Shown here: positions 3,193 to 39,443 of the stretch, piece after piece
Numbering within the stretch: the stretch's first letter is position 1
Layout: each line of letters starts with the position of its first letter
IMG/VR virus record: IMGVR_UViG_3300042922_000542
Coordinates: 62,001-126,000 of that record
Reading direction: 5' to 3' (one strand)
Length of the DNA: 64,000 bases
Translations under genes and position numbers: made by a program
The notes under the pieces: generated by a model
The model's database searches: none
What the model was told of the DNA's origin: nothing
What the model saw: only the letters and a program-made list of their open reading frames with translations

Positions 3193-5748
3193 ATGGGGAG
3201 GCAGATAGATACAGTAGTTAAGCCAATTCGTTCTTATTATAATGAGAGCGATAGAGAAAATTCTGATTATGACCAAGTACTGCCAATAACATCATTTGAT
3301 GCAGTGCTAGAAACAGGTGATCCAGAGTCTATGAATTTAACAACATTAAAACAAAATATAGAACATAGACTAAGTTCTCTTGATACAGGTAAACAGAATA
3401 TTATTCAAGCTGGGAATAGTGGTAATATCGCAATATTCACTGGACAAGAAGGGGTATTAAGTGAATTGCTTAAAATAGATAATATTACGACAGAGCCTTT
3501 ATCCGCTTCATCTAACAAAATTATTACGGAGAAGGCAATTGTAAATTACTATCAAGACGTAATACAGCCCGAAATAGGAAACGCTGGGGGTTTGGGCGAA
3601 AAGGTCGAGAGTTTAGAAATAGATCGTACTATAATGCAAGGTGAGCTTGATAACATAGATACTCAGTTATCAACAGTCACTAGCGATTTATTATTGAAAG
3701 CAAGTATATCTGAACTAGATGATGTACGTGTATTAGCTCAAGGTAAAGCTGATGTAACTGAGATCAATGCTATTAAAGCTGATGTAAATCAAACAAAGAT
3801 TGACATACAGGACAGAATTATTAAAAATATACCAATTTTACCAGGTACATATACTAAAGTTATAGTTGATGAGAAGGGACTTATAACATCAGGGAGTAAT
3901 ATTACATTAAATGAATTACCGGATTTTCCTATCTCTAAAATAACGGATTTGGATAATGCTATTAGCGCTAAAGCTAATGTTGAAGATTTAAATTCGTTAC
4001 AAACTGCAGTTAATGGTAAACTTTCAGGTAATAATGCTATAGCCCCAGGTACTGCTACTAAAGTTACATATGATGCTAAAGGTTTAATAACTAATAGCGA
4101 TATATTGACTGAAATAGACTTACCTGCAATTAGTATTGATAAAATTACCGGGTTGAGGGATGCATTGGATGCAGCTGGATCTGAATCATCAATTGAAGAT
4201 ATCCGAACTCAATTAAATAATAAATTAGATAAAAATTTATCTATTGTTGCGGGTACTGCAACTAAGATTACTTATGATGTCAATGGTTTAATAACATCTG
4301 GATCCAACATAACCGCTGCGGACATACCTGTTATTCCTATTTCAAAGGTGGCCGGGTTGGATGATAATTTAATTAGTATAAACAATACCTCGGCCGATCT
4401 GCAAATTCAATTAAATAATAGAGTTATTAAAAATGAGGATATTGTTGCTGCTACCGCTACTAAAGTTACATATGATGCTAAAGGTTTAATTACAGGAAGT
4501 CAATCATTAATTGAATCGGATATACCTGAAATACCTACTTCAAAAGTAACTGGATTAGATGCAGCATTGGCTAATATTGGTGATATTCCGGCAGATATTG
4601 AAACTCAATTAAATAATAAATTAGATAAGAATATCGATGTAGTCGCTGGTACATTTACTAAAATTACCTTTGATATTAAAGGTCTAATAACATCCGGATC
4701 TAATTTAATAGAAGCAGATATACCTGAATTGGGGATTGATAAAATAACAAATCTTCAGGCAACGATTAATGATAAACTATCAAAAAATATCGACATTATT
4801 GCAGGTGTCGGTACAAAAATATCTTACGATACTAAAGGCCTTGTTATAGGTGCTGAAAATCTAACTGCAAATGATATACCTGAAATACCTACTTCAAAAG
4901 TAACTGGATTAGATGAAGCTTTAGCTAATATAGATATACCTGCTGATTTAGAAGCTACATTAAATGCTAAATTGGATAAGAATATTGATATTGTTGCCGG
5001 CACATATCCTAAAATTACTTACGATACTAAGGGATTGATAACAGGCGGCCAAATATTAGTTGAAGCTGATATTCCCACATTACCTACATCAAAAATAATC
5101 GGTCTGGACGATGCATTAGCTAATATAGATATACCTGCTGACTTACAAGCTACATTAAATGCTAAACTAGATAAGAATATTGATATTGTTGCGGGTACTG
5201 CTACTAAAATCACATATGACGTTAAAGGATTAATAATATCCGGTGAAACGTTAGTAGCATCAGATATACCTGAATTGGGGATTGATAAAATAACAAATCT
5301 TCAGGCAACAATTGACGGTAAACTATCAAAAAATATTGCAATAACAGCAGGTACAGCTACTAAAATTACCTATGATGTAAATGGTTTAATAACTGCAAGT
5401 GATATATTAACCGCTGCAGATATACCTGAAATACCTACTTCAAAAATAATCGGTCTGGACGATGCATTAGCTAATATAGATATACCTGCTGATTTACAAA
5501 ATCAATTAGATAGTAAAGTTACTAAGAATGCTGACATCGTAGGTGGGACATTTGCTAAAATCACATACGATGATAAAGGATTAGTTACCAGCGGTCAAGT
5601 TCTGACTGAATCAGATATACCTGAAATAGGAATTGCTAAGGTTACTAATCTTCAAACATCTCTTGATGGTAAAGCTACAGTAGTTGCATCAACCACAGCA
5701 CCAGTAGAAACACTAGCTTCAAATATATTATATTGTGTATATGAGTAG
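3193..5748 (+). CDS. Tail fibre protein built from 10 tandem 52-68 aa repeats
   Basis: Repeat consensus N-x-x-I-x-AGT-x-TKITYD-x-KGLIT...DIPE...KI-x-GL-x-x-AL occurs 10 times, typical of phage tail-fibre shaft repeats. SD AAGGAGGA. Followed by XkdW/XkdX-like small genes. Confidence 0.85.
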   Translation: MGRQIDTVVKPIRSYYNESDRENSDYDQVLPITSFDAVLETGDPESMNLTTLKQNIEHRLSSLDTGKQNIIQAGNSGNIAIFTGQEGVLSELLKIDNITTEPLSASSNKIITEKAIVNYYQDVIQPEIGNAGGLGEKVESLEIDRTIMQGELDNIDTQLSTVTSDLLLKASISELDDVRVLAQGKADVTEINAIKADVNQTKIDIQDRIIKNIPILPGTYTKVIVDEKGLITSGSNITLNELPDFPISKITDLDNAISAKANVEDLNSLQTAVNGKLSGNNAIAPGTATKVTYDAKGLITNSDILTEIDLPAISIDKITGLRDALDAAGSESSIEDIRTQLNNKLDKNLSIVAGTATKITYDVNGLITSGSNITAADIPVIPISKVAGLDDNLISINNTSADLQIQLNNRVIKNEDIVAATATKVTYDAKGLITGSQSLIESDIPEIPTSKVTGLDAALANIGDIPADIETQLNNKLDKNIDVVAGTFTKITFDIKGLITSGSNLIEADIPELGIDKITNLQATINDKLSKNIDIIAGVGTKISYDTKGLVIGAENLTANDIPEIPTSKVTGLDEALANIDIPADLEATLNAKLDKNIDIVAGTYPKITYDTKGLITGGQILVEADIPTLPTSKIIGLDDALANIDIPADLQATLNAKLDKNIDIVAGTATKITYDVKGLIISGETLVASDIPELGIDKITNLQATIDGKLSKNIAITAGTATKITYDVNGLITASDILTAADIPEIPTSKIIGLDDALANIDIPADLQNQLDSKVTKNADIVGGTFAKITYDDKGLVTSGQVLTESDIPEIGIAKVTNLQTSLDGKATVVASTTAPVETLASNILYCVYE

Positions 5749-5807
5749 TAGCGATTTATGCTATATTAAATATAACATAAATAATAAAAAATTATAAAAG
5801 GAGACAT

Positions 5808-6239
5808 TTGAATATGCAAAAAATAAAATTATCCAATGGCTTGTTTATTGAAAATATACAACAAATAAATGACTATGAGGAAAAAGATGTCACAAATCAA
5901 GATTCTAGAAAAGTGTTGAACATAGTAGTACTCAATACCAACTACGATACTGTATATAATACTTTCTCAAATCCAAATAATTTAGCTGAAATTGAAATTC
6001 ATGGTTTAAAGGATGTCGTAATAGGAACTGACCCTGTAACCGGCGACCCTATAACTGAACAGCAATATGTAAAAGAAGGTTTGCAGCTTGGATATACAAT
6101 ACTAAATAAAATTTCATCTAATTTGCAAACAAATACATTTACAGTACAATTGCATAGAAAATCACAAATTGAACAGCAGTTATTAGATACCCAATTGGCA
6201 TTGGCTGAACTTGGAACACTAATAGGAGGTATGGTTTAA
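5808..6239 (+). CDS. XkdW-like tail-fibre-associated protein
   Basis: C-terminus QQLLDTQLALAELGTLIGGMV and position between the fibre gene and a CD1375/XkdX-like peptide, as in Firmicutes phage tail modules. Confidence 0.55.
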   Translation: MNMQKIKLSNGLFIENIQQINDYEEKDVTNQDSRKVLNIVVLNTNYDTVYNTFSNPNNLAEIEIHGLKDVVIGTDPVTGDPITEQQYVKEGLQLGYTILNKISSNLQTNTFTVQLHRKSQIEQQLLDTQLALAELGTLIGGMV

Positions 6240-6346
6240 TGGCTAAGATATATGCGAATTTAATAAGACAAGATGTATGGACTATGGAGCAGGTACCTGA
6301 TAAATGGAAAGCTGCAACACAAGCTGAATTAGATAAAGACAATTAA
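6239..6346 (+). CDS. CD1375/XkdX-like small phage protein (35 aa)
   Basis: MAKIYANLIRQDVWTMEQVPDKWKAATQAELDKDN*. TAATG stop/start overlap with the upstream gene and SD AGGAGGT. Below the ORF track size cut-off. Confidence 0.75.
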   Translation: MAKIYANLIRQDVWTMEQVPDKWKAATQAELDKDN

Positions 6347-6350
6347 AAAA

Positions 6351-6376
6351 ATAAGCAGGGTTAATTCCCTGCTTAT
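6351..6376. terminator. Bidirectional intrinsic terminator
   Basis: ATAAGCAGGG-TTAATT-CCCTGCTTAT with an A-run before and a T-run after, between convergent genes. Confidence 0.85.
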
Positions 6377-6378
6377 TT

Positions 6379-7662
6379 TTATTTTACATATTTTTTCATG
6401 AAATCTTCAAATGATAATTTTAGGAATATTACATCAGTTTGTAATTCTCCAACCTTAATGATATCAGATTTTAATTCGATATCTTTAGGAATTAATTTAC
6501 CATAGAAGTCGTATGTGAATTTTCTAAATACTTCAGCGTTAACTGGTTTTATTTCTAACATTAAATCAACACGTCCTGGACGGAAGAATGTGGGTGAAAA
6601 TCGTTCTATATGATTGGTTGTCATAATTATTATTCTATCTTCTCCACTCATTAATCCATCTAATGCATTCAGCATATGGGCAAACGCTAAATTTTCTTCA
6701 CCTGTAATTTTCTTATCGGGAGCTGTTTCATCATCCTTTTCTTTTTCTGGAACAAATTCATTTATCAGAAATGGATATTTATCAATATCCGATATTAAGA
6801 ATAATGGGTTATTAACTGGATGTGCTGTAATTGCATCAGGTATAAATCTACCATTTTTCCCACCAGTTACATAGTATATGTTTCTGTACCATTCTGATGC
6901 AATAGCCCTTGCTATAGTATCTTTACCAGTAGATGGCATCCCATATAATAATATTTTTAAATTATGCGTAATTCCATGCTGTTTATAATATTCTTTATTA
7001 GCGAAAAACTGATTGACTGCGGTAACGATTGTTGTCTTAGTTTCCGTATCTAAATATACAGTATTCAATCGACGTTTTTGTATTGGTGCCAGCTTATCCC
7101 AATATGTGTAACCATCTGATTCATGAGCATCTTTGTATACATTAACAATCGTTGAATTAGATCGTATCTTTAATAATGAATCTCTATGACTGAGCATATC
7201 GCTTTCAAAATCAGTAACAAATGAATTACTCATTGAAAATGTTCCAACCGTATATTCGCGATTAATTAAACGCGACATACCACCATTTAGATTTGTAAAA
7301 TTATTAGTTTTTATAGTTAAGACGATCTCATAATTACGATAGTTCAAGATATGTGAACCATCGCCAAGTTGAAAATATTCACCAGCTTCAGAATCTCTAC
7401 GGGATGCTTTTAAATTGAGAGATGATTTCTTTTTGATGTCATTGTACTTATACAATATTCCGTATAGTGCTTGTTCCATCCATTCATCATAAAAACCATT
7501 TACTGTAAAAGAGATCATTCTGAAAAATCTATCTTGAATTTTTTTAACAACAAAATTTCCAACGGTAGTTGAAACCGCTAGTACATTTGATTCAACTAAT
7601 TCAACTGTTGGTTTGATAAATAACTTTTGCGCTTCTTCCTTTATAAGTCTTTGTAATGTCAT
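6379..7662 (-). CDS. BCS1-like AAA+ ATPase
   Basis: KRRLNTVYL...FFANKEYYKQHGI...ILLYGMPSTGK (Walker A), FLISDID (Walker B), LNALDGLMSGEDRIIIMTTNH and FRPGRVD (SRH/Arg finger). This matches the BCS1 clade motif order. Confidence 0.8.
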   Translation of the reverse strand: MTLQRLIKEEAQKLFIKPTVELVESNVLAVSTTVGNFVVKKIQDRFFRMISFTVNGFYDEWMEQALYGILYKYNDIKKKSSLNLKASRRDSEAGEYFQLGDGSHILNYRNYEIVLTIKTNNFTNLNGGMSRLINREYTVGTFSMSNSFVTDFESDMLSHRDSLLKIRSNSTIVNVYKDAHESDGYTYWDKLAPIQKRRLNTVYLDTETKTTIVTAVNQFFANKEYYKQHGITHNLKILLYGMPSTGKDTIARAIASEWYRNIYYVTGGKNGRFIPDAITAHPVNNPLFLISDIDKYPFLINEFVPEKEKDDETAPDKKITGEENLAFAHMLNALDGLMSGEDRIIIMTTNHIERFSPTFFRPGRVDLMLEIKPVNAEVFRKFTYDFYGKLIPKDIELKSDIIKVGELQTDVIFLKLSFEDFMKKYVK

Positions 7663-7689
7663 TTTTATAATCCACCTCTGTTTTTTAAT

Positions 7690-7725
7690 ATATGACGATG
7701 GGGATTTAGTTCCCCATCGTCATAT
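7690..7725. other. 15-bp perfect hairpin between the tubulin and AAA genes
   Basis: ATATGACGATGGGGA-TTTAGT-TCCCCATCGTCATAT. There is no U-tract in the minus (sense) direction, so it may stabilise or process the RNA rather than terminate it. Confidence 0.6.
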
Positions 7726-7734
7726 TGTATTTTT

Positions 7735-8889
7735 TTAGAATTTTGAAAATATGTCATTAATCTTAACTTCAGATTTCTGTTTCTTTTCGTCAATGCGTTC
7801 AACGCCAACCATTTTAGAAACTGCTAATGTCGCAGCATCTTCTAATTGTTTATTAGATGTTAATGCGATTCTTAATTTTTCTAAACGTTCATTCATTTTG
7901 GTTATTCTATCTATTATAGGTGATAACCCGCTTGCAATGAAATATAAATAATTCATGCTCTCATCATTTTTGTTTATAGCATTATGATTGAATCTTTCGG
8001 CTTGTGGCACACCTAAGAAGTCTTGAACTTTCTGCAAATCAGATTTATATAAATCTTGAACTTCTTCAGTGAAATAAGTTATTACACCGTAACGTACAAC
8101 ATTTTTATCACGGTTAGTTTCCGCATGCTTAGAAGTCTTTAATGCTTTAATTATAAGATCATCCGCAGTCGTATCTTCCATAGTCTTTTCAGTGAGACCT
8201 TTATTAATCCTAAGTACGATTAAACGTCCAGGGGTAGCAACTATACTCTCCATATCAGCAACGTCTATACTTTCATAAGGTGTAGGATGATTATCAATAC
8301 CTGATATTACACGAATATCTTCTACGATTGATTCATTCACTTCAGTTAACGATTTAGTTGAAGATAGATCAGATGTCGTTTCATTATCATATAGCATGTA
8401 CGTCGTATTACTTGCCAGATTCGTGTATACCTCTTTAAGAAACTCCAATGCATTTTCAGTCTCACCTCTAGATGATTGTAATTGAGGTAGTACTGCAACT
8501 AATATAAAATTTACATCTGGAAACATTTCTTTTAGTACATTTACAAATACAGGTGCCGCACCAGATCCAGTACCCCCAGCTGTAGATGCTGCTACGAATA
8601 CATATTTCTTTTCATTAACAATTGACTGAAATTCGGTATTTCTTAGAATATCGGCTATATCTTGTTTGAAGTATCTTTTCATTCTCTTACGATTTTTACC
8701 ACTACCTTCTAATTCATTCTCCCCTATTTTAAATTTCAATCTAGAATCTCCCACCATTGATAAATCGGCTTCAGATGTATTTATATAAATACAATCAAAC
8801 AATTCTGGATGTTTACGTTCTGCTAGGTATGCAATTTGTCCCCCGCAGTTCCCAATACCGATTATACCAATTTTGCTGTAAAGTTCCAT
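7735..8889 (-). CDS. Tubulin/FtsZ-family GTPase (PhuZ/TubZ-like)
   Basis: IGIIGIGNCGGQI (T1), INTSEAD, GSGKN, STAGGTGSGA (tubulin signature), YMLYDNE, IDVADM (T7 region). Confidence 0.9.
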   Translation of the reverse strand: MELYSKIGIIGIGNCGGQIAYLAERKHPELFDCIYINTSEADLSMVGDSRLKFKIGENELEGSGKNRKRMKRYFKQDIADILRNTEFQSIVNEKKYVFVAASTAGGTGSGAAPVFVNVLKEMFPDVNFILVAVLPQLQSSRGETENALEFLKEVYTNLASNTTYMLYDNETTSDLSSTKSLTEVNESIVEDIRVISGIDNHPTPYESIDVADMESIVATPGRLIVLRINKGLTEKTMEDTTADDLIIKALKTSKHAETNRDKNVVRYGVITYFTEEVQDLYKSDLQKVQDFLGVPQAERFNHNAINKNDESMNYLYFIASGLSPIIDRITKMNERLEKLRIALTSNKQLEDAATLAVSKMVGVERIDEKKQKSEVKINDIFSKF

Positions 8890-8990
8890 AAATACTTCCT
8901 CCTATTAAATTAATTAAATTATTTTAAAAATGATATCACTTTTTAAGATTTTTTAATAGAAATCTTCTTTTCTAATATCGTATTATATAA

Positions 8991-9001
8991 ATAATATATA
9001 A
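8991..9001 (-). promoter_or_regulatory. TTATATATTAT promoter-like motif upstream of tubulin
   Basis: Exact motif copy on the minus strand, about 100 nt before the 8889 start. Confidence 0.45.
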
Positions 9002-9032
9002 TTATAATGTAATAGTGATTTTGTATATTTAG

Positions 9033-9043
9033 TTATATATTAT
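9033..9043 (+). promoter_or_regulatory. TTATATATTAT promoter-like motif
   Basis: Exact copy 37 nt before the primase ATG (9080). Confidence 0.6.
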
Positions 9044-9079
9044 TAAGATATAATAAAAATTGAATTGGAGTGGTTTTGT

Positions 9080-10066
9080 ATGTCAGACATAATTCAAGTT
9101 AAATATAAAATAATGGATAAACTAAGTGAACTACCAGTTTTTCGTAAAATTTCGAATACACAATATCGTATTAGATGCCCAATATGTGGTGATAGTCAGA
9201 AAAATTTAAACGAAGCCCATATGTATTTAAAATGTATATTAGATGATGATTCACCTATACTCTATAATTGTTTTAAGGGTAATTGTAATGCTCATGGTAA
9301 GATTGATAGTAAATTCCTCAAATTATTAAACATATCTATACCAGAGATGAATATTATTGATAATCGTCTATTTAAAAGAATTCCATCAGTTAAAGATACT
9401 GATATCAATATTTTGAGCGGATCAATTGATATTAATTCAGATCAAGTTGGATATATTGAATATCGATTAGGGAAAGGATTGGCATATGACGATTATGATA
9501 AATTCAAAATTGTTTGGGATATGAATGAGTTGCGAAACTTCATCCCTAATAATAGAATTAAAAATATTCTACCAAACAATAGAGATTCGATATCATTTTT
9601 ATCAGATGATAAGTCTACGCTGTTAACAAGATTTTTTAATAATGATGATTCGCCTGATCGATGGAAAAAGATTAAATTATTTAACACTGATAATAAATCA
9701 TTCTATACAATAAAGAATGTATTAGATTTATTCACGCCCGATCGTATCGTTATTAATATAGCTGAAGGAGTATTTGATATACTTTCAGCATATAAGCATT
9801 TTAATACAGGAGATAATTCAGCGTATATATCTTGCTTGGGTGCTGATTATGAAAGTGCTCTATCGTATGCAATTACTAAAGGATTGATCGGTAGTAATGT
9901 AAGTGTAAATGTATATATTGATTCCGATATAGATGAAAAGCTATTACAACGTAATTTAAAAAAATATAAATGGTTATTTAATTCAATTTCAATATTGAGA
10001 AATGTGATTGAAAAAGATATCGGATTTAGTGAAGATAAAATTCAACTTAAAAAATATGAATTATAG
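9080..10066 (+). CDS. DNA primase (Zn finger + TOPRIM), T4 gp61/DnaG-like
   Basis: RCPICGDS...LYNCFKGNC zinc finger; IAEGVFD and YIDSD TOPRIM acidic motifs. The ATG at 9080 follows SD GGAGTGG (the track uses TTG 9065). Confidence 0.85.
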   Translation: MSDIIQVKYKIMDKLSELPVFRKISNTQYRIRCPICGDSQKNLNEAHMYLKCILDDDSPILYNCFKGNCNAHGKIDSKFLKLLNISIPEMNIIDNRLFKRIPSVKDTDINILSGSIDINSDQVGYIEYRLGKGLAYDDYDKFKIVWDMNELRNFIPNNRIKNILPNNRDSISFLSDDKSTLLTRFFNNDDSPDRWKKIKLFNTDNKSFYTIKNVLDLFTPDRIVINIAEGVFDILSAYKHFNTGDNSAYISCLGADYESALSYAITKGLIGSNVSVNVYIDSDIDEKLLQRNLKKYKWLFNSISILRNVIEKDIGFSEDKIQLKKYEL

Positions 10067-10083
10067 AATGGAGCGATATTTAT

Positions 10084-10296
10084 ATGATAAAAAATATAGT
10101 AGTTAAAGAGGATACACATCCTGAATTGTATGATAATAAATTGGGTTTGGGTCTTGATATTACAGGCGATATGGTCACGGTTGATACTGATAAAGGATTG
10201 ATATGCAGATATCCGATTACTATGAACTGTATTATTAGTTTATCAGATAATCCGAATTTGCAATATTTATTCGACGAAGTGGAGGCGCATGCTTAA
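10084..10296 (+). CDS. Hypothetical protein
   Basis: SD GGAGCG; operonic between the primase and the FEN-like gene. Confidence 0.7.
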   Translation: MIKNIVVKEDTHPELYDNKLGLGLDITGDMVTVDTDKGLICRYPITMNCIISLSDNPNLQYLFDEVEAHA

Positions 10297-11379
10297 ATGG
10301 AAAATTATATTCCAGGCGTCGGTATTTCTGCAGGATGCCTAATGTTAAAATGGGATCTATTAAATTCCCATATACATAGATATGATAAGATAGAACCTGG
10401 CGACAATGTAAATGTATTTATAAATTTCGAATCAATTTTAAGAAATCTTACAATGAAGAAGAATATTAATGAATCTATTATGTTTCATAAACAGAAAGTT
10501 GTATTGGAACTTGAATCTGCAATATTAAATCTTGTTGCAAATTACAAAATGTATTTTAATAAAGAGAGAACCAATTCGAAGATATATCTCTATTATACTG
10601 AACTTACTAATACTGATCATGAAATGACTACGTATAATAAATTTTATCGTTCATATTATTCTAATAAATATTTACAAAATCCTCAATTTAAATCAATAGG
10701 ACAATTGATGACCGATATAATTATACCTGAGATAGAATTAATATTGTCATATATACCCAATTGTTATTTTATTAAATCTAAGCGATTTGACGGTAGTTTA
10801 ATTCCCGCAATAATTAGTGAATTAGATCCCGAATCAAAAAATGTAATAATAACATCTGATGTATTTGATACACTATATCTATTCAAGGAAAAATTTACGA
10901 CTGTATACATTAAACGACGATATGCAAACTTCAAGGTAATATCTGATGTTGAGAGTTCAGTGCAGTCTATAGTTTCTGAAACAAATCCATTTGATTTAAC
11001 TATATTTAATTCAGAAATGTATTATAAGCTATTATTATCCATCAAAGGTAGTAGAATTAGAAATATAAAGTCTGCAAAAGGATTTGGCTATTGTAAATTC
11101 TTAAATTTATTAACTGATGGGATGGATCGAAATATAGTATTAAAGGATTATGGATCGATTAATTCAGTAATCGATTTATTTCCTGAAAAATATCGAATCG
11201 ATATCAAAACTGCATTCGATTGTACTAATCTTGATATACAACATACACTATTGACTGATTCGGATATTGAATCTATAAAATTACAGATAGTCGATAATAT
11301 CGACACCGGTTCAATAGAAGTACTGAATAATAAACGATTTTTAGATTTTCCTATCAATTTACAAGGACTAATAGGTTGA
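10297..11379 (+). CDS. Divergent PIN/FEN-like 5'-3' exonuclease (RNase H-like)
   Basis: VFINFESIL, VIITSDVFD and the H3TH-like GSRIRNIKSAKGFG follow the 5'-3' exonuclease motif order, but several acidic residues look substituted. Confidence 0.45.
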   Translation: MENYIPGVGISAGCLMLKWDLLNSHIHRYDKIEPGDNVNVFINFESILRNLTMKKNINESIMFHKQKVVLELESAILNLVANYKMYFNKERTNSKIYLYYTELTNTDHEMTTYNKFYRSYYSNKYLQNPQFKSIGQLMTDIIIPEIELILSYIPNCYFIKSKRFDGSLIPAIISELDPESKNVIITSDVFDTLYLFKEKFTTVYIKRRYANFKVISDVESSVQSIVSETNPFDLTIFNSEMYYKLLLSIKGSRIRNIKSAKGFGYCKFLNLLTDGMDRNIVLKDYGSINSVIDLFPEKYRIDIKTAFDCTNLDIQHTLLTDSDIESIKLQIVDNIDTGSIEVLNNKRFLDFPINLQGLIG

Positions 11380-11470
11380 TAAATTAAAAGGAGGGAAATA
11401 AATCCCCTCCCTTTATTTTTTTATAAGATTTTATTTTTTGACGATATAATAAGTAAAATATTCAGAGAGT

Positions 11471-14400
11471 GTGGTGAAAGTAATGTCTACTGCAAAAATT
11501 AGTGCAAAGAACGGATCAATTGCAGCGCCATATATTAAACGTGCATCCGGTTTATTAAAAGGCGCTACAGCGGAATATATTAGAGAATATATGCCAACAT
11601 CAGTATCTACAATTGAATCAATGAAAGATACGATCAAACCATTTTCAGCATCTATATCTAATGCTGGTAGTGTTATAGCTAAAACAAAAGAATTGACCGC
11701 TCAACAAAATTTGCGTAAAATAAATGATTGGTTTTTTGGAATGAATAGTTCATTCGATAATGGAAGTGCTGATTCGGATTTATCATTCGATATAGAAGTT
11801 GGTAATAGTAGTGAAATCATCATGGCGCAATTATCAGCTGAAGAAAGATCGGCTAATCAAATATCTAAAACTGTTGTTGAAACATCCCATAGGATGGTTG
11901 AGGCACAATTGTCTGCAACTGCAAATATACTAACATCTATGGACAAAGTCGGTGCAGCGGTTGTATCAGGATTCGATAATATCAATAATACTCTTAATAA
12001 ATTATTAGAAGTGACTACAAAAAATACAAGTGCATTGATTGCTACATCTGTAGCTGCATCAGTTGGATCGAATAGTAATAATCCAATGTTGAGCTCCGGT
12101 AAATTCAATCTTAATGCATACAAGAAATTGATATCTAGTAATGTCCAAGGTAGTGAATTTGGAATGCTTACTGCGATACTTCCAATATTGACTGGTAGTA
12201 TGGGAAGAGAAATGCTATCCTCTGATAATCTATCAAAGATGGGATTTGCTGCATTAATGAATAAAACAAATCCTAATTTAAAGAAAAACATGGAAGCCCT
12301 TGATAAATCTATAAATGGAATTTTAATGAATTCCCTTATAAGATTAGGTGATAAACGAGATCAGAATAATTTAATAGGAACACTTGGTAGAATTTTTGGA
12401 ATGGATACAAATCAAAAACGTCTATCAACAGGTCGAACAAATCTTGAATTTAAAGCTGTACCATTTGATACAGTTGCTAAAGAATCACTTGTTAGTACGA
12501 TACCTGGATATTTACGACAGATTTTAGTTCAATTAGGTGGACCGGATCAAATATATGATTATAGAAGTAGATCATTTAGAAGTAAGGGTGCAATAGCTCG
12601 TGATTTTAAAGATGCTGCGGCTACTAGTAATTCATTTAGATATGCAAGTGGAAGTGTACGTAATACCGTGGGTAGATATGGTAATAATGATGCTAATTAT
12701 AGTAATTTGCGTGATATGATCCATGATTTAATAATGGAGGATATGGGGGGTTCATCCCGTGATAGAAACCACGTATCGGCCCAACTGAGTAGTGAAGCAA
12801 CAGCCAAAAAATATATAAATTCATTATTGAAAAATAGCGGGATTAATAGAGGCAATGGTAGAGCCATAGGTCAATTGGCTAAGGGATACTCATCACTTGA
12901 TGCACAAGGATTATACGATCTTAGGCAACAATCAATAACATCTTCAATGAAACGTAATGCAAATTTACAGGAATATATTGATAATGCGAATATGTTCGGA
13001 GTAGATTTGTCATATATAAGTAATACGAGAGATGATAATAAAAATGAAATAATTAGACGATATACTGGTAAATCATCGAGTTCCATTATTAATTCCAAAT
13101 CAGGTATATCAACTGGCGGTACTGATTATACTAATTCTGCATTATATGAAATTTATAGACGTCTTAATACAGGCATAAACGTATTTCAAGTTGGGTCATC
13201 AAATGAAAAATCAAATAAATACAAATGGATCGGTAAATTACCGGCGCCATCGAGTCATTCTACCAATAGTGATTCTGAAACGGATAAAAGTTCTAAACCG
13301 TTAGTTTCATCGTTAACTGGCCATACGGATCATACAAATATGCTTCTAGAAGATGGTAAATCCGGTAAAGTTGGTAAATGGGCATCTGCATCTGGTAAAA
13401 ATCTCGTAAACGCATTATTCAATGGCAATGCTGAAGATGTGAGAATTGCATTCGGTCAGATGGTTGGGGACATATCTGAAGTTGCGTCCAAACCTATTAA
13501 AGATTTCTTAATTGGTAACGAATCTGCTAACAAGAAGGGTGTATTTGCGAAAATTAATGATTCATTTGGAAACGTTACAGGCTATTTTAAACATAAATTT
13601 ATGGGTACTGGATATGAATATACCGACGAATCTGGTAAAATGGTTAAAGTCGCTAACAATGAAAAAGGCGGTATAATTGGATATCTTAAAGATAACGTAA
13701 TGGATGTCTTTAAAGGTGGAAAAAATAAAGCAGGAAAATGGCTCAACGATGTTTATAAATATTTTGATTTTGGAAAATCAGAAGGCAACACATCATCGAA
13801 AAAGAGAGCAATAATATCGGCATCGGTTGGAGCTATGGCAGGTTTAGGATTTCTTGGAGGCCCGCTTGGATTGTTAACAGGTGCTATTGCTGGAACTGCA
13901 TTAGATAGTAGCAATTTTGGTAATATTTTAAAAGAAAAATTATTTGGTAAAGATGAATTCGACAAGGATGGTAAATCAAAACACAAAACTGGTATAATTG
14001 AAAAAGTAGTAAATAATATCACTGACCCATTGCGATACCAAATAGGAAAAACATTTGATACTGCTGGTAATGTTTTAAAGAAAAATATATTAGGACCACT
14101 ATCAGATATTGGATTCGCTATCAAGGAAAGGGCTTCAAATGCGGCAGGTAGTGCAGTCGGTAAATTCTTTAGTCAGATATTTAAAGGTGCTGGTTGGATT
14201 GCTAAACAAGCATTAAATATTCCATTGGCACTTGCTGGTATTCCAATAGCATACCAAGGTAATGCTGCAAGAGCTGGAATGCAAGTAGGTGGTGCGGTTG
14301 CTGGGACGGGAATGAATTTTATTGCCGATATGATTTCTGGTAAATCCGGTCGAGAGAAATTAAGAGATCGTCGCAAAGAAAGAGCTGATCAAATTAAAGC

Positions 14401-17400
14401 TGATAAAGATGCAAGTGGATACTATGAGGGCGGAGTATTTGGTAGTTATAAATCTTGGAAGAAGAAACAAGATGAAGCAAGATCAAATAAATCTAATTTA
14501 TCAGATTATATGGCATCCGACAAAACTGTTGTGGATGCTTCAATTAAAACTGAAGAGAATACATCCGCTATGGCAAAGGATATTGGTTCATTAACATATC
14601 ATGCAACACATCATGACCCAATTACGAATTCATCAATATATACTAGCGACAAAGGCGTATATGAAAAGATTACAGATATATTTGATTTACTTAAGAGACG
14701 ATTTGATGGTGGATCAGGATTATCTTCATTATCTGGTGCAGACGGAGTAAATTCAATATTAAGTGCGGCTTCTGGTATTGGAACACAAAGCGGGTTGTCA
14801 ATGGAAGATGTGGAAGATATTAGTTCAATCGCAGATGAATCTAATCGCGGTAAACCCAATAAAAGATCTATACTTTCTAGGTTTAAAAATTTACTTAAAC
14901 GTAATGCCTCAAGTAATAATACTGATGGGGTTAGTGAAAAATCCAAGGGTATGCTGAGTAATATTGCGGGATCAGTTGGTGATTTTATAAAGGACGTATT
15001 ACCAAGTTGGGCAGTCCCATTAGGTGGTTTGATGTTAAGTTTATTATCACCTGCAATCAAATCAATAGTATGGGGTGACGGTGAAAACGAAGGTATCGTG
15101 CCACAATTAGGTGCAGCAATATTAAGCTATATTACTGGTAACACATCTAATGAATCCGGCAGCACATCTTTACCTAAATCTATTGGAGGTATCAATAGTT
15201 CTTTAAATGAAATTGCTACAGGTCCATTACTATCAAATGCTAAAATTGGTGGTATCAATATTACGGGTAGTACAGATCCTATAGGATTATTTGGTACATT
15301 CAATAATAGTAAACGTGCTATATCAGGATTCAAAACATTAAAGAGTTCAGCATCGGCAGCATCTAAAGTTGTCAAAGAGTCAGTTCCATTAGCTCAACGA
15401 TTTGGTGCTAAATTTGCTGTGAAGGCTGCAATGACATCTGGTGCAAAAACTGTAACGCAAACTACATTAAAGGGAACAGCCGCCGGAATATTTAAAGGTG
15501 TTAAAGGATCAATTAAATTTTTATCAAGTTTACTGAGTTTCGCATTAGATAGTATAATAATGCTATTTCAAGGCAATGAAGTATTTGGTAAAGATAAATA
15601 TAGTGCATCATTAGTACAACAAGCATCTCTTATAATTGGAGGTGCATTAAATGGAACTGGTAGTGGATTTGCAGATGGTTTCCAATGGGCTGATATAATT
15701 GATATCGCCGGCAATGCATTAAAATGGACTGCGGTTGGTGCAGCGATGGGTTCTGTAGTTCCTATATTAGGTAACGGCATCGGTGCTGTATTAGGATTTA
15801 TATTAGGTCTTATACTTGGAATGTGGGGCGGTAAAACACTTGCGAAACAAATAGGGAATCTATTTGAAAATAGTGGAGCGTCTAGAGCTACGAATTATGT
15901 AGGTCGAGATTTATATGCAAAGGGTCATGGGTTTGGATCAGATGTATCTAGTTTTGTAAAGGGAATCGGTTCTAAGGCATTAAATTATATTAAGAGTGCC
16001 GCAGGTTCTATTGCAAACTATGTTAGTAGTATGACTGGTAAAGCCAAAGATATATTTAATTTGATGAAAAATTGTAATACAAATTCCGGAGTAAATGGAT
16101 ATTTAAAATTGATATCTGATATATCAAATATAGTATCTAATACTGGATCCGGTGGAGGAAGATCATTTGACTTGTTCTCTACAGCATATCGTGGTCATGG
16201 TTCAATGTATTATCAGGGTAATTACGGATCTGTTTTAGATATGAATCAATCTGGATGTGGACCAATTGCAGCTTCATATATAGCTAACTCATATGGAAGA
16301 AATATTACACCAATGCAGGCCGCTCAATTTTTAAATAATAGCGGCTTCAGAGATAGTTCAGGCGGAACATCTAGTTTAGGTATTGCTGCAATTAATAAAC
16401 AATTAGGAATTCCTATGGCATCTAGCGGTGTAAATATAAATGCGATTGGAAATAAATTATCCAGAGGAGAGCCTGTTGCGCTTCTAGGGAAATCGAATGA
16501 TCCTAATAGTCCATACACCAAATCAGGTCATTTTATTATAGCTGACGGTATGGATAGTTCGGGAAATATTACTGTAATGGATCCATTAAATCCTACGAAA
16601 AGAAAATATGATATCAATAGCATCATGAACGGTGCACAAGAAGCAACATATGCTGATGGTGGAGTTGGGTATGGGGATGAGTCTAAATTAAATAAAGGAA
16701 ATCCTCTCAATAAATCGTTCAGAATAACAAGTCCATTTGGTGATAACTCTCCATTTAGAGGTGGCATATCTCATCGTGGAGTTGATATGGTGCCACAGGA
16801 TGGATCAAAACAAGCACAAGTCGGTGCTGCATATAATGGAACAATAGTCGCAATTAAATCTAATATCCCAGATAGTTTTACTGGAATAAACGATAATACC
16901 AGGAGAAATTCAACTGGTAACTATGTGAGTTATAAAACACCACAAGGTATCACAGTAACTAATATGCATCTGAAAGCAAATAGTATACCATCGAATTTAC
17001 GCATTGGTAGTTCGATAAGACCTGGTGATAAAATTGGAGATATGGGATCGACTGGTATGTCTACAGGCCCTCACTTACATTATCAATTTAAAGATGATAA
17101 AGGAAACTATATTAATCCGACAGCATCAATAACAGGTGGTGCAACTATGAATAATTTCAATAGCTCTGCAAGCCCATACATTGCATCATCCAATGATGGT
17201 GGAATATTCTCGCAATTGAGTAGTATATTAGGTAATACTGCATCTAAGGTAATGAGTTTCTTTGGATTATCTGATTCATCTACAAGTTCATCTATTAATA
17301 CTACAGGTGATGCTAACTCATCAGACATAATATTCTCAAAGGCTAAGAATCTTGATACATCATATACGGACTATCCAGGTAGATCAATGGGAATCGAATC

Positions 17401-18405: not shown

Positions 18406-18438
18406 AATATAGATGGGGAAATAGACCCCATCTATATT
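18406..18438 (+). terminator. Intrinsic terminator-like hairpin
   Basis: AATATAGATGGGG-AAATAGA-CCCCATCTATATT immediately after the 18400 stop. Confidence 0.65.
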
Positions 18439-37869: not shown

Positions 37870-38898
37870 ATGTCTAAATCGGAAAAAAAGAAAAAGAAGA
37901 AGATAAAAATTCCGAAGACCGTTCTTCAATTAGAATGGAGTCCTAAAAAGTTTGCGAAAAAACATAATATTAGAGTAAGCGAAAAAGGCATGAATAAGAA
38001 AGAAAAGAAACATGCTAAAAAACGTCTTAACCGCGAATATGGTGATTTCGCAATTGCAAATCTTAATAAGGCTGTAAAAATACTATCTGAAAATCAGATG
38101 GAAGATAATAAGAAAATTGATAAGGTGAAAAATGCAGTTGAATCCATAGTTTCTAATTCTGAAGTTATGAAAACTATTGCTAAACGTTATACAAAAGAAC
38201 GTGACCAATTCCCTAATCTGATCTATCTACCATATATGATAACAAATACAATTCTATACTATAGTCGTGAAGATTTGACTGTAGAAGAAAAAGCAATCGC
38301 AGATAGTTTAAACAAAGAAGAGTTAATCGAATTCTGCGAAACTATACTAAAGAAACAAATCAAAGTTTATCGCAATAATGATTTAAGTAATGAAATTGCA
38401 TTTCAGATTGCAACAGTGATACCTACTGCAAAAAGATTGAAAGGTAATAATCAATGGTATAAACGTTTAATACAAACGCTGTATACAATAGCTGAATATG
38501 ATGATGTTGACGTAGAGCAGGTGTTTAATGCAATTTTAAAGATCGACAAAAAGAAAGTAATTAATAAGAAAGAGTTCTATGAAAATTTCTTCAGTGAATT
38601 TATTATGACCAAGGCATCAAATAAAGTTCACAGCTTTAATGATAAACAAAAGGAATTGCATGAAACATTGTTAGAACAGACAGCTGTATACTTAAACAGC
38701 AGAAAACCTAAACAACTTAAAGAAATATTAAAGAGATATATTAAGCGTAGAAAGACTGCAGAGTCTTATAAAAATGATAACAAGCGCGTTATTAAATTTA
38801 TCGATTTTGCAAATTCCAACTCTGAATATACCAATTTAAAAGCTGTAATCCAAGAGCTGATCGAGGATAATTCTACTAATGAACTTTACTTAGGTTAA
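37870..38898 (+). CDS. Hypothetical helical protein with Lys-rich N-terminus
   Basis: SD AGGAGGT; 342 aa. Confidence 0.8.
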   Translation: MSKSEKKKKKKIKIPKTVLQLEWSPKKFAKKHNIRVSEKGMNKKEKKHAKKRLNREYGDFAIANLNKAVKILSENQMEDNKKIDKVKNAVESIVSNSEVMKTIAKRYTKERDQFPNLIYLPYMITNTILYYSREDLTVEEKAIADSLNKEELIEFCETILKKQIKVYRNNDLSNEIAFQIATVIPTAKRLKGNNQWYKRLIQTLYTIAEYDDVDVEQVFNAILKIDKKKVINKKEFYENFFSEFIMTKASNKVHSFNDKQKELHETLLEQTAVYLNSRKPKQLKEILKRYIKRRKTAESYKNDNKRVIKFIDFANSNSEYTNLKAVIQELIEDNSTNELYLG

Positions 38899-38927: not shown

Positions 38928-39443
38928 ATGTCAAAGAAGAAGAGTAAAAGAATAGAAAAAGAAACGAGAAAAATTATTGAATCAATATCAGATCTCGTGA
39001 AATATAAAAATGACGGTTACAAGTTTAAAGCAGGTAAGAAGAAGCAGATTCGTGAAATTAAGAAAACATGTGCTCACTGGGTAATTAGAAAAGGTAAAGA
39101 GGTTCCAACTGTATCAGTTGATCCAGAAAATCCGAATAATTGGAAATGCCGTATTTGTGGAAAATCATTCCCAATCAAACCATTATCATATGAAGATTAT
39201 GAAGCAATCTGTAATCAATTTGAAGCAGCTGTTAATCAAGGATTCTTCTACAGTGTGAAGATGGGTGGAGCCGCTGAGGATACCAAAGTATTCTTATCAA
39301 TGAAGAAAATGGTACCAAGATTCAAGAAGATTATTAAGAATGAAATTAAGAATCTTAATAAGCGTCAGGAATATGAAGACCGTAAGGCGAACTCTGATAC
39401 AATGAGTCAGTTCGGCAATTACTCTTCATACTCATATAAATAA
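38928..39443 (+). CDS. Hypothetical protein, possible Zn finger
   Basis: SD GGAGGC; CAHW...KCRICG. Confidence 0.75.
   Translation: MSKKKSKRIEKETRKIIESISDLVKYKNDGYKFKAGKKKQIREIKKTCAHWVIRKGKEVPTVSVDPENPNNWKCRICGKSFPIKPLSYEDYEAICNQFEAAVNQGFFYSVKMGGAAEDTKVFLSMKKMVPRFKKIIKNEIKNLNKRQEYEDRKANSDTMSQFGNYSSYSYK

What the first reader, a model, noticed from the sequence alone, without database searches (positions are those of the whole stretch)
6379..8889. Tubulin/PhuZ paired with a BCS1-like AAA+ ATPase
Seen: the two genes are co-oriented and separated by a 15-bp hairpin with no U-tract on the sense strand. Known: BCS1-clade ATPases translocate or remodel proteins and are best known from eukaryotes; characterised phage tubulin systems use TubR/TubY or act alone. 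Inference: the AAA may be a dedicated filament remodeller (katanin/ClpX-like role) or a spindle-cargo factor.
Basis: partly seen in the sequence, partly recalled or inferred. Interest (0 to 1): 0.6.

Follow-up and report, generated by a model that had tools for sequence, protein, structure and literature searches.

The report
Phage tubulin paired with BCS1-like ATPase
An uncultured 246-kb jumbo phage, and its many metagenomic relatives, keep a TubZ-like tubulin gene directly upstream of a soluble BCS1/YjoB-like AAA+ ATPase gene; this points to an undescribed ATPase partner for a viral cytoskeleton but does not prove one.

Summary
On the minus strand, a 384-aa TubZ-like tubulin (7735-8889) is followed by a 72-nt spacer and a 427-aa AAA+ ATPase (6379-7662). 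The spacer holds a perfect 15-bp hairpin. The ATPase has full BCS1 architecture (BCS1_N-like domain plus AAA domain) but no membrane anchor.

- **Linkage:** in all 28 related metagenomic loci with enough flank, the tubulin sits directly upstream of the ATPase. Every spacer examined carries a strong hairpin of different sequence.
- **Independent case:** a distant Clostridia-associated contig joins a BCS1-like ATPase from another clade to a tubulin in the reverse order, with overlapping stop and start codons.
- **Against:** the conserved unit is really four genes (FEN-like exonuclease, primase, tubulin, ATPase). Some lineages keep the tubulin without the ATPase, and at least one appears to keep the ATPase without the tubulin. 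BCS1-like ATPases in the three cultured jumbo phages I inspected are not next to a tubulin. About 60 similar hairpins occur across this genome.

My best reading (about 40%) is that the ATPase acts on the tubulin as an assembly, disassembly or turnover factor made at a lower level. Inherited synteny with a general chaperone is almost as likely. No interaction or transcript data could be obtained.

The parts
8991..9001 (-). Promoter-like motif TTATATATTAT, 101 nt upstream of the tubulin start codon
   Evidence: The window has 11 exact copies against 1.85 expected; 0 of 100 shuffles reach 11. The genome has 43 copies of the 10-nt core TATATATTAT, mostly intergenic, in sense orientation and 20-60 nt upstream of starts. 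Its PWM score here is 22.2. The core TATATTAT lies 67-141 nt upstream of the tubulin ORF in 8 of 12 relatives.
7735..8889 (-). TubZ-like tubulin/FtsZ-family GTPase, 384 aa. It has the GGTGSG signature, a T7-loop IDVADM, a variable linker of about 40 aa and a conserved C-terminal peptide (I/V)NxxDIFxKF.
7690..7725 (.). Perfect 15-bp stem, 6-nt loop hairpin in the 72-nt spacer. It has no U-tract on the sense strand and a T7 run on the antisense side. It is probably a terminator, attenuator or 3'-end stabiliser.
7672..7678 (-). Shine-Dalgarno sequence GAGGTGG, 9 nt upstream of the ATPase start codon, allowing independent translation initiation
   Evidence: Read directly from the sequence
6379..7662 (-). 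Soluble BCS1/YjoB-like AAA+ ATPase, 427 aa. It has a BCS1_N-like beta-rich domain (about 20-195) and an AAA domain. Motifs: Walker A GMPSTGKD, invariant Walker B SDID, sensor-1 N350, R361/R364, and an invariant GGKxG[KR][FY][IV]P at the pore-loop-1 position.
6347..6380 (.). Bidirectional intrinsic-terminator hairpin (14-bp stem, A/T tracts on both sides) overlapping the ATPase stop codon, between convergent genes
9065..10066 (+). T4 gp61-like DNA primase, transcribed divergently from the tubulin. It carries the same promoter-like motif at 9033-9043 and is part of the conserved four-gene block.
10297..11379 (+). FEN/RNase H-like 5'-3' exonuclease candidate (360 aa), the outer member of the conserved four-gene block

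Best explanation
The two genes form a functional module in a large clade of uncultured jumbo phages that encode their own multisubunit RNA polymerase.

- **Filament:** the tubulin is a GTP-dependent, TubZ-like filament former. It is transcribed from a phage promoter-like motif about 100 nt upstream.
- **Expression (inferred):** a conserved stem-loop after its stop codon ends or stabilises most transcripts. The ATPase would then be made in smaller, enzymatic amounts from read-through, using its own strong ribosome-binding site. The unit ends at a bidirectional terminator.
- **ATPase (architecture and motifs shown):** it is a soluble ring ATPase of BCS1/YjoB architecture. Its N-terminal BCS1_N-like domains would form a chamber. 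Unlike Bcs1, it keeps an aromatic loop at the pore-loop-1 position.
- **Action (inferred):** it uses ATP to act on tubulin subunits or filament ends. It could hold, load, extract or recycle them, and so set filament assembly and turnover.

Shown: gene identities, motifs, fold matches, conserved adjacency, conserved hairpin. Inferred: read-through expression, ring and chamber formation, and any action on the tubulin.
For: - **Adjacency:** the pair is adjacent and co-oriented in 16 of 16 IMG/VR loci (ATPase 43-55% identical, tubulin 52-58%) and in 12 of 12 metagenome loci with at least 1.2 kb upstream. Flanks beyond the block differ.
- **Short contigs:** many contigs of 2-6 kb appear, by matching contig lengths, in both the tubulin and the ATPase protein lists.
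- **Independent juxtaposition:** in L070/L165 the order is ATPase then tubulin, and the tubulin ATG overlaps the ATPase stop (ATGAATAG).
  - That ATPase lies in a different, 100/100-supported clade.
  - The other sampled members of that clade have no tubulin neighbour.
- **Subfamily:** the tubulin-linked ATPases form their own clade (98/99 support, with L157 as sister). I compared only two sister-clade ATPases and L070's by profile; they align over the AAA region or its C-terminal part but not the N-terminal domain.
- **Likely active enzymes:** K247, S291-D292-I293-D294, N350, R361 and R364 are invariant in the ATPase. GGTGSG and the T7 aspartates are invariant in the tubulin.
- **Pore loop:** [KR][FY][IV]P aligns to the KYYG pore loop of VAT, where Bcs1 has no aromatic residue.
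- **Promoter motif:** it lies upstream of the tubulin but not in the spacer, both here and in 10 of 12 relatives.
- **Precedent:** the soluble BCS1-like YjoB is a substrate-specific chaperone with an internal chamber (PMC9565160).
Against: - **The block is four genes:** the conserved unit is exonuclease, primase, tubulin and ATPase. Adjacency links the tubulin to the primase just as strongly.
- **The genes are separable:**
  - L157 has primase and ATPase back to back with no tubulin between them.
  - L061 has the tubulin in place with no ATPase within 1.4 kb downstream.
  - Sister-clade phages (tubulin 35-39% identical) have other neighbours. One complete 223-kb genome has no detectable BCS1-like ATPase.
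- **Cultured phages:** in the three cultured jumbo phages I inspected (of 206 records with a hit), the BCS1-like ATPase is not next to a tubulin.
- **C-terminal peptide:** the tubulin's conserved C-terminal peptide is also present in relatives without the ATPase, so it is not specific to the ATPase.
- **Hairpin:** a conserved terminator-like hairpin lies between the genes, and such hairpins are common in this genome.
- **No data:** no RNA data set holds the locus, and there is no interaction evidence of any kind.
Confidence: 0.4

Rival explanations
1. The adjacency is inherited synteny only. The ATPase is the general BCS1-like chaperone or assembly factor found in many jumbo phages, for example for virion or other protein-complex assembly as Iyer et al. 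proposed. It happens to sit next to the tubulin in an old, stable block and has no specific action on it.
For: - BCS1-like ATPases occur in 206 phage records and are not beside a tubulin in the three inspected (PMC7824862).
- phrog_7485 matches residues 89-394 at E 1e-45, so much of the protein, including part of the N-terminal domain, is shared with other jumbo phages.
- The conserved unit is four genes, including primase and a FEN-like exonuclease.
- The tubulin and ATPase each occur without the other beside them.
- A terminator-like hairpin separates them in every relative examined.
- Intein-like insertions show the ATPase is an important conserved gene but say nothing about tubulin.
Against: - A second juxtaposition in reverse order, with translational coupling, involves an ATPase from another clade. 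This is hard to explain by inheritance.
- Both flanks of the block are reshuffled among relatives, yet the pair is never split in 28 loci.
- In L019 a 337-aa ORF has been inserted between primase and tubulin, but nothing splits tubulin from ATPase.
Confidence: 0.35
2. The ATPase is a cargo or adaptor rather than a remodeller. It rides on or is positioned by the tubulin filaments, taking the place of TubR-type adaptors, and links them to a cargo such as replicating DNA, capsids or a compartment.
For: - No TubR-like gene and no centromere-like iteron array were found near the tubulin, so an adaptor is missing.
- The tubulin has a flexible linker and a conserved terminal peptide of the kind that docks partners in FtsZ and TubZ.
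- The pair is conserved.
Against: - The C-terminal peptide is also conserved in relatives without the adjacent ATPase.
- The ATPase has no recognisable DNA-binding or membrane segment.
- BCS1/YjoB-type proteins are known as chambered chaperones or translocases, not adaptors (PMC9565160).
Confidence: 0.1
3. The ATPase works with the replication genes of the block (primase, FEN-like exonuclease), for example by remodelling or loading replisome components. The tubulin would be an insertion into that block.
For: - In L157 the ATPase sits divergently next to the primase without a tubulin.
- The block contains lagging-strand functions.
- The primase and the tubulin-ATPase unit share a divergent promoter region with the same motif.
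Against: - BCS1-like ATPases of the three cultured jumbo phages inspected are not next to primases.
- L070/L165 couples an ATPase to a tubulin with no primase nearby.
- The architecture is that of a protein chaperone or translocase, not a clamp or helicase loader.
Confidence: 0.1

Closest known systems
TubZ of Clostridium botulinum phage c-st and Bacillus plasmids (type III TubZRC partition systems)
   Same: It is the best sequence and structure match for the tubulin (3v3t/4xcq, TM 0.85 by target; B. cereus TubZ 4ei7). Pfam Tubulin_2 (PF13809) is on record. It has a flexible C-terminal tail with a conserved terminal peptide.
   Different: No TubR-like gene, no tubC-like iterons and no TubY were detected nearby. 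The genome is a 246-kb phage with terminal repeats and its own multisubunit RNA polymerase, not a plasmid prophage replicon. The conserved neighbour is an AAA+ ATPase.
PhuZ spindle of nucleus-forming (chimallivirus) jumbo phages
   Same: It is a phage-encoded tubulin in a jumbo phage that also encodes multisubunit RNA polymerases. phrog_4733 'tubulin PhuZ' matches at E 1e-12 over residues 5-217.
   Different: PhuZ structures are not among the 50 best fold matches; TubZ, CetZ and FtsZ are. No chimallin-like protein was identified among the large ORFs I scanned, though that test was weak. No AAA+ partner for PhuZ turned up in the papers I searched.
Mitochondrial Bcs1 (heptameric AAA translocase of the folded Rieske protein)
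   Same: It is the best sequence hit (E about 1e-19) and a full-length fold match that includes the Bcs1-specific N-terminal domain. The short spacing between Walker A and Walker B and the insertion after Walker B align with Bcs1.
   Different: - There is no transmembrane helix; the highest 19-residue Kyte-Doolittle mean is 1.05.
- Walker B reads SDID instead of EDxD.
- Walker A reads GK[D/S/T/E].
- An invariant aromatic loop sits at the pore-loop-1 position, where Bcs1 has none.
Bacillus subtilis YjoB (soluble BCS1-like hexameric, substrate-specific chaperone)
   Same: It is soluble, with an N-terminal domain plus a single AAA domain, and is the next-best full-length fold match (7w42, E 8e-15). 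The expected host group is also Firmicutes. Its published function, a chambered chaperone for particular folded proteins, fits the proposed role (PMC9565160).
   Different: Sequence similarity is low (18-19% in the structural alignment). YjoB is a cellular stress-regulon protein with no known cytoskeletal client.
Katanin/spastin (microtubule severing) and ClpX acting on FtsZ
   Same: These show the concept of an AAA+ ring acting on a tubulin-family polymer. The phage ATPase has an aromatic pore-loop-1-like motif.
   Different: The phage ATPase is not a member of the meiotic clade or of ClpX. It has no MIT or zinc-binding N-terminal domain, and all its best matches are Bcs1/YjoB. This is an analogy only.
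BCS1-like ATPases of cultured jumbo phages (phrog_7485; noted by Iyer et al. 2021)
   Same: They are homologous over residues 89-394 (E 1e-45) and occur in a jumbo-phage setting (PMC7824862).
   Different: In the three cultured phages inspected they are not adjacent to a tubulin. The tubulin-linked proteins form a separate clade.

Membership tests
Tubulin/FtsZ superfamily | GTP-binding signature [SAG]GGTG[SAT]G and N-terminal GxGxxG loop | tested here: met
   AGGTGSG at residues 104-110 and GIGNCG at 11-16. G105-G110 are invariant in 24 sequences.
Tubulin/FtsZ superfamily | T7 (synergy) loop acidic residues that complete the active site of the neighbouring subunit | tested here: met
   SIDVAD, with S207, I208, D209 and D212 invariant. 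The equivalence to FtsZ NxDxxD rests on general knowledge.
Tubulin/FtsZ superfamily | Two-domain tubulin/FtsZ fold | tested here: met
   The model has pLDDT 82 and pTM 0.85. It matches TubZ, CetZ and FtsZ with E from 1e-22 to 1e-16.
TubZRC type III partition system | Adjacent small DNA-binding adaptor TubR | tested here: inconclusive
   None of the neighbouring ORFs scanned (143 aa and 70 aa against NCBIfam; 143 aa also against PHROGs) has any match. A very divergent winged-helix protein cannot be excluded.
TubZRC type III partition system | Centromere tubC: array of short iterons near the operon | tested here: not met
   No tandem array was found in 5500-11500. The only repeats are 2-3 copies of AT-rich 7-10-mers and two divergent copies of a promoter-like motif.
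PhuZ (chimallivirus spindle) | Specific similarity to PhuZ rather than to other tubulin-family proteins | tested here: not met
   phrog_4733 scores E 1e-12 over the GTPase domain only, no better than FtsZ (1e-14) or TubZ (2e-12). No PhuZ structure is among the top 50 fold matches.
PhuZ (chimallivirus spindle) | Genome encodes a chimallin nuclear shell | tested here: inconclusive
   Twenty large ORFs outside the window were scanned against PHROGs. Multisubunit RNA polymerase pieces were found, but nothing recognisable as a shell protein. No dedicated chimallin profile was used.
Bcs1 | AAA domain of the Bcs1 type | tested here: met
   Bcs1 entries are the top hits by sequence and by fold.
Bcs1 | Bcs1-specific N-terminal (BCS1_N) domain | tested here: met
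   Full-length structural alignments cover 385-410 columns. In the Atlas, residues 20-195 match BCS1_N clusters with TM 0.57-0.64.
Bcs1 | N-terminal transmembrane anchor (membrane translocase) | tested here: not met
   No 19-residue window exceeds a hydropathy of 1.05 in P0002 or in three relatives. Residues 1-25 form a low-confidence amphipathic helix.
Bcs1 | Heptameric ring | not testable with these tools
   The complex tool's size limit (1000 residues) excludes a 7 x 427 ring.
YjoB-like soluble chaperone | Soluble N-terminal domain plus one AAA domain, with a fold match to YjoB | tested here: met
   7w42/7w46 match at E 8e-15 to 1.5e-13 over 361-400 columns. No transmembrane segment is present.
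YjoB-like soluble chaperone | Hexamer with an internal chamber needed for holdase activity | not testable with these tools
   This needs oligomer modelling or experiment (PMC9565160 describes the feature).
Katanin/spastin-type severing enzymes | Meiotic-clade AAA domain with an MIT-type N-terminal domain | tested here: not met
   The N-terminal domain is BCS1_N-like. No katanin, spastin or Vps4 entry ranks with the Bcs1/YjoB hits.
Katanin/spastin-type severing enzymes | Aromatic pore loop 1 that grips the tubulin tail | tested here: inconclusive
   The invariant [KR][FY][IV]P aligns to the KYYG pore loop of VAT. Its position in a ring was not modelled.
Rho-independent (intrinsic) terminator | GC-rich stem-loop directly followed by a U-tract on the transcribed strand | tested here: not met
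   The stem-loop is present, but the sense strand continues ATTAAAAAAC. The T-run lies on the antisense side. Some relatives (L017/L027, L019, L023, L024) do have sense T-runs.

The most novel reading that the evidence does not exclude
The ATPase is a dedicated ATP-driven regulator of a viral tubulin. It would be a soluble, chambered BCS1-type ring that loads, caps, extracts or recycles TubZ-like subunits. That would make it the first AAA+ machine known to control a prokaryotic or viral tubulin polymer other than by proteolysis, and a functional analogue of tubulin chaperones or severing enzymes that arose independently in phages.
Probability: 0.3. Interest if true: 0.8.

Novelty: new variant of a known kind. 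Interest (0 to 1): 0.55.

Why it matters
Phage tubulins (PhuZ, TubZ) are the best-studied viral cytoskeletons. Their known partners are DNA-binding adaptors (TubR, TubY) or none at all.

A conserved ATPase partner would add an energy-consuming control layer to a bacterial-type tubulin polymer. So far that is known only for eukaryotic microtubules and, through proteolysis, for FtsZ. It would also give a concrete client for the phage BCS1-like ATPases, which are widespread in jumbo phages and whose role is unknown.

The family is large: hundreds of metagenomic proteins, many on contigs of 200-290 kb. The two proteins are small and soluble, so the hypothesis can be tested directly in vitro.

Tried and rejected
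- **Complex prediction:** full-length tubulin plus ATPase, each with its own alignment, returned 'no answer' (score 0.00). This is not evidence either way.
- **Cultured phage matches:** megablast and tblastn of the tubulin against cultured phage records found nothing.
- **Single-protein locus scans:** scans of viral contigs with P0002, the L070 ATPase and the L070 tubulin found nothing. The alignment-based scan was needed.
- **RNA evidence:** only two DNA runs hold the locus, one of which is probably the source, and no run is on record as RNA. I therefore did not use read laying, because contigs cannot show transcript ends.
- **Rfam:** no family matched 5500-11500.
- **Centromere iterons:** none were found.
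- **A promoter for the ATPase inside the hairpin:** TCATATATTAA, which overlaps the 3' arm, is a 9-of-11 match to the promoter-like motif. It scores below 6 with the position-weight matrix, against 22-26 for the tubulin and primase copies, so I rejected it.
- **L162/L164 upstream gene:** I considered that the 345-aa gene upstream of the unlinked L162/L164 ATPases might be a very divergent tubulin. hhalign gave probability 0.07, so I rejected it.
- **L144:** it looked like an exception because the gene upstream of the ATPase is not a tubulin. By my reading of its sequence, that 176-aa ORF ends in a Bro-N-like motif. The contig ends there, so the case is unresolved.
- **Mirror-tree co-evolution:** I did not attempt it, because all four block genes share one phylogeny and too few distinct genomes were available.
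- **Large profile search:** I did not use the search of protein representatives, because the word search already gave hundreds of relatives.
Full report
**What is there.** The window is bases 62001-126000 of a 246,147-bp viral record with 127-bp direct terminal repeats and 30.2% G+C. A soil metagenome run that may be the source of this DNA holds the whole stretch searched. Both genes lie on the minus strand.
- The tubulin-family gene is 7735-8889 (384 aa, P0001).
- A 72-nt spacer follows.
- The AAA+ gene is 6379-7662 (427 aa, P0002).
- Each gene has a strong Shine-Dalgarno sequence.
- The spacer holds a perfect 15-bp, 6-nt-loop hairpin at 7690-7725.
- On the sense strand the hairpin is followed by ATTAAAAAAC, so there is no U-tract. 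A T7 run follows it on the antisense side.
- The ATPase stop codon overlaps a canonical bidirectional terminator at 6347-6380.

**The tubulin.**
- Pfam PF00091 and PF13809 (Tubulin_2) are on record for it.
- The best solved relatives by sequence are TubZ of C. botulinum phage c-st (E about 1e-12), then FtsZ and CetZ.
- PHROG 'PhuZ' and NCBIfam FtsZ match at similar, modest levels.
- An AlphaFold model built on 24 relatives (pLDDT 82, pTM 0.85) is closest to c-st TubZ (TM 0.85 by target) and B. cereus TubZ. No PhuZ entry is in the top 50.
- The GGTGSG signature and the T7-loop SIDxxD are invariant, so the protein should bind GTP and polymerise.
- After the globular body comes a poorly conserved, charged linker of about 40 residues (pLDDT about 30). 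It ends in a conserved terminal peptide, (I/V)NxxDIFxKF. This layout is like the partner-docking tails of FtsZ and TubZ.
- The peptide is also conserved in distant relatives that lack the adjacent ATPase.

**The ATPase.**
- Bcs1 is the best hit by sequence (E about 1e-19, AAA domain).
- The model (pLDDT 75) aligns to full-length Bcs1 over 385-410 columns, including the Bcs1-specific N-terminal domain. The next match is the soluble B. subtilis YjoB.
- The Atlas independently places residues 20-195 with BCS1_N clusters.
- There is no transmembrane segment: the highest 19-residue hydropathy is 1.05, and the same holds in relatives. The protein is therefore a soluble BCS1/YjoB-type ATPase, not a membrane translocase.
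- In 18 family members K247, S291-D292-I293-D294, N350, R361 and R364 are invariant. The residue after the Walker A lysine varies (D, S, T or E).
- An invariant GGKxG[KR][FY][IV]P lies between β2 and α2. In HMMER alignments RFIP pairs with the KYYG pore loop 1 of VAT, whereas Bcs1 has no aromatic residue there.

**Genome context.** The phage encodes several multisubunit RNA polymerase β/β'-like proteins, a family-B-like DNA polymerase and a large terminase. It therefore belongs to the broad group of jumbo phages with their own RNA polymerases. I could not establish whether it forms a phage nucleus.

Upstream of the tubulin, on the other strand, lie a T4 gp61-like primase (9065-10066) and a FEN/RNase H-like exonuclease candidate (10297-11379).

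A promoter-like motif, TTATATATTAT, is strongly over-represented.
- The window has 11 copies against 1.85 expected.
- The genome has 43 copies of the 10-nt core, mostly intergenic, in sense orientation and 20-60 nt upstream of starts.
- Two divergent copies sit between primase and tubulin, at 9033 (+) and 8991 (−). None lies in the tubulin-ATPase spacer.
- The core TATATTAT is found 67-141 nt upstream of the tubulin ORF in 8 of 12 relatives and is absent from the spacer in 10 of 12.

**Is the linkage conserved?** Within the clade, yes.
- A scan of IMG/VR with an ATPase alignment returned 16 loci with a close relative (43-55% identity). All 16 have the tubulin (52-58% identity) directly upstream and co-oriented.
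- A metagenome scan added 12 loci with at least 1.2 kb of upstream sequence. All 12 have the same arrangement.
- Some of these 28 loci are near-duplicates.
- The protein searches returned hundreds of relatives of each protein.
- The conserved unit is a four-gene block: exonuclease and primase on one strand, tubulin and ATPase on the other. Genes outside the block differ among relatives. One relative (L019) has an extra ORF between primase and tubulin.

**The hairpin.** All 13 related loci examined (12 distinct sequences) have a strong, usually perfect stem-loop (ΔG −18 to −40 kcal/mol) between the tubulin stop and the ATPase start. The sequences are unrelated. Some are followed by sense-strand T-runs and others, like the window's, are not.

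The window's genome has about 60 such intergenic hairpins. The element is therefore a generic terminator or 3'-end element of these phages, kept at this junction by selection.

The absence of the promoter motif in the spacer fits tubulin transcripts mostly ending at the hairpin, with the ATPase made from read-through. This is an inference. No RNA data set holds the locus.

**Limits of the linkage.**
- *Sister clade.* Tubulins 35-39% identical (L004-L009, L062) sit in another context. Their downstream neighbours are homologues of window genes 37870-38898 and 38928-39443. One complete 223-kb genome of this clade has no detectable BCS1-like ATPase. Others have a distant one far away that aligns only over the AAA region.
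- *L061.* The tubulin (46% identical) keeps its place opposite exonuclease and primase, but no ATPase lies within 1.4 kb downstream.
- *L157.* The ATPase (32% identical over its full length, sister to the linked clade) sits directly opposite the primase with no tubulin between them.
- *Cultured jumbo phages.* 206 records carry BCS1-like ATPases. In the three I inspected, none is next to a tubulin. Iyer et al. had already noted these orthologues and proposed a role in membrane-proximal head assembly (PMC7824862).

**An independent juxtaposition.** A Clostridia-MAG contig from sheep colon (L070) and a 95%-identical contig from another sample (L165) carry a 464-aa BCS1-like ATPase immediately followed by a 378-aa tubulin homologue.
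- hhalign probability for the tubulin is 99.1, it has the AAGGTGSG signature, and Pfam Tubulin is on record as a weak hit.
- The tubulin ATG overlaps the ATPase stop codon (ATGAATAG).
- In a maximum-likelihood tree this ATPase lies inside a different, 100/100-supported clade. Its nearest sampled relatives (55-56% identical) and three more distant members have no tubulin neighbour.

Two juxtapositions, in opposite order and with ATPases from different clades, are hard to explain by inheritance alone. This is the strongest argument for a functional tie. It rests on one lineage.

**Most likely mechanism.** My best reading (about 0.4) is that the pair is a module.
- The TubZ-like protein builds filaments.
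- The soluble, chambered BCS1/YjoB-type ring is made in smaller amounts.
- The ring acts on tubulin subunits or filament ends to control assembly, disassembly or recycling.
- The YjoB precedent, a substrate-specific chambered chaperone (PMC9565160), and the pore-loop-like aromatic motif make such an action plausible. Nothing here shows contact; the complex prediction gave no answer.

Nearly as likely (0.35) is that the ATPase is a general phage chaperone that merely shares an old gene block with the tubulin. Two minor rivals remain, at about 0.1 each: a cargo or adaptor role replacing TubR, since no TubR or tubC was found, and a role with the neighbouring replication genes, as the L157 arrangement suggests.

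**Novelty.** Phage tubulins and phage BCS1-like ATPases are each known. I found no paper that describes their pairing. I rate the finding a new variant of a known kind, of moderate to good interest. It can be tested directly with two small soluble proteins.

Noticed in passing
L021/L022, L023, L024/L026, L025 (ATPase ORFs of 583-800 aa); also P0042, P0067, P0078, P0088, P0108: Intein-like insertions of 146-358 aa sit at one and the same site in the ATPase P-loop, after GPPG and before [TS]GK. They start with PQP and end with [HCFM]N. Pfam Intein_splicing is on record for P0067. LAGLIDADG-bearing insertions also occur in the other ATPase clade (P0333, P0349, P0350). The N-terminal proline is unusual for an intein.
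   Followed up: partly
window 8991-9001(-), 9033-9043(+), 20263, 31194, 34539, 45927, 48626, 52819, 54011, 59104 (+), 62092(-): TTATATATTAT is a strongly over-represented motif (11 copies against 1.85 expected), found 20-100 nt upstream of genes and often followed by a TATAAT-like element. It is probably a promoter for one of the phage's own RNA polymerases. From memory, it resembles the AT-rich early promoters of phiKZ-like phages.
   Followed up: partly
window 18406-18438, 7690-7725 and about 60 sites genome-wide: Perfect GC-cored hairpins follow about a quarter of the genes. Several that lie between co-oriented genes have the T-run only on the antisense side, or none at all. These polymerases may therefore not need a U-tract to terminate.
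   Followed up: partly
window 9065-11379: A T4 gp61-like primase and a FEN/RNase H-like 5'-3' exonuclease candidate (no PHROG function; identified by Atlas features and structure) form a conserved block with the tubulin and ATPase. A 70-aa ORF (10084-10296) with no match lies between them.
   Followed up: partly
window 7735-7760 (C-terminus of the tubulin): The conserved terminal peptide (I/V)NxxDIFxKF after a disordered linker recalls the FtsZ C-terminal peptide (DIPxFLR type, from memory). It might dock onto a host FtsZ-binding protein or onto the next filament subunit.
   Followed up: no
window 37870-38898 and 38928-39443: These two genes (342 and 171 aa, unknown function) are the homologues of the genes that directly follow the tubulin in the sister clade (L004-L007, L062). 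They are alternative candidate partners of the tubulin.
   Followed up: partly
window 11471-18400: A 2309-aa ORF carries a metallo-endopeptidase domain (about 1745-1920) and an endolysin/lysozyme-like domain (about 1980-2140). It is probably a virion-associated cell-wall-degrading or tape-measure-like protein.
   Followed up: no
P0002 residue 248 (window about 6919-6921): The Walker A motif reads GK-D here. Across the family this position is D, S, T or E and is followed by S/T, while Walker B is invariantly SDID rather than DE or ED. This is an unusual pair of nucleotide-site substitutions that may compensate for each other.
   Followed up: partly
L065-L140 (genome contigs): Dozens of Dehalococcoidia/Chloroflexota MAG contigs encode proteins 25-32% identical to the GTPase half of this tubulin. 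Some assemblies have several copies. This is a cellular tubulin-like family that I did not examine.
   Followed up: no
L144:2-532 and L142:1792-2326: Extra DNA lies between the tubulin and ATPase in L142 (about 540 nt). In L144 a 176-aa ORF with a Bro-N-like C-terminal motif lies upstream of the ATPase. These suggest mobile insertions at this junction.
   Followed up: partly
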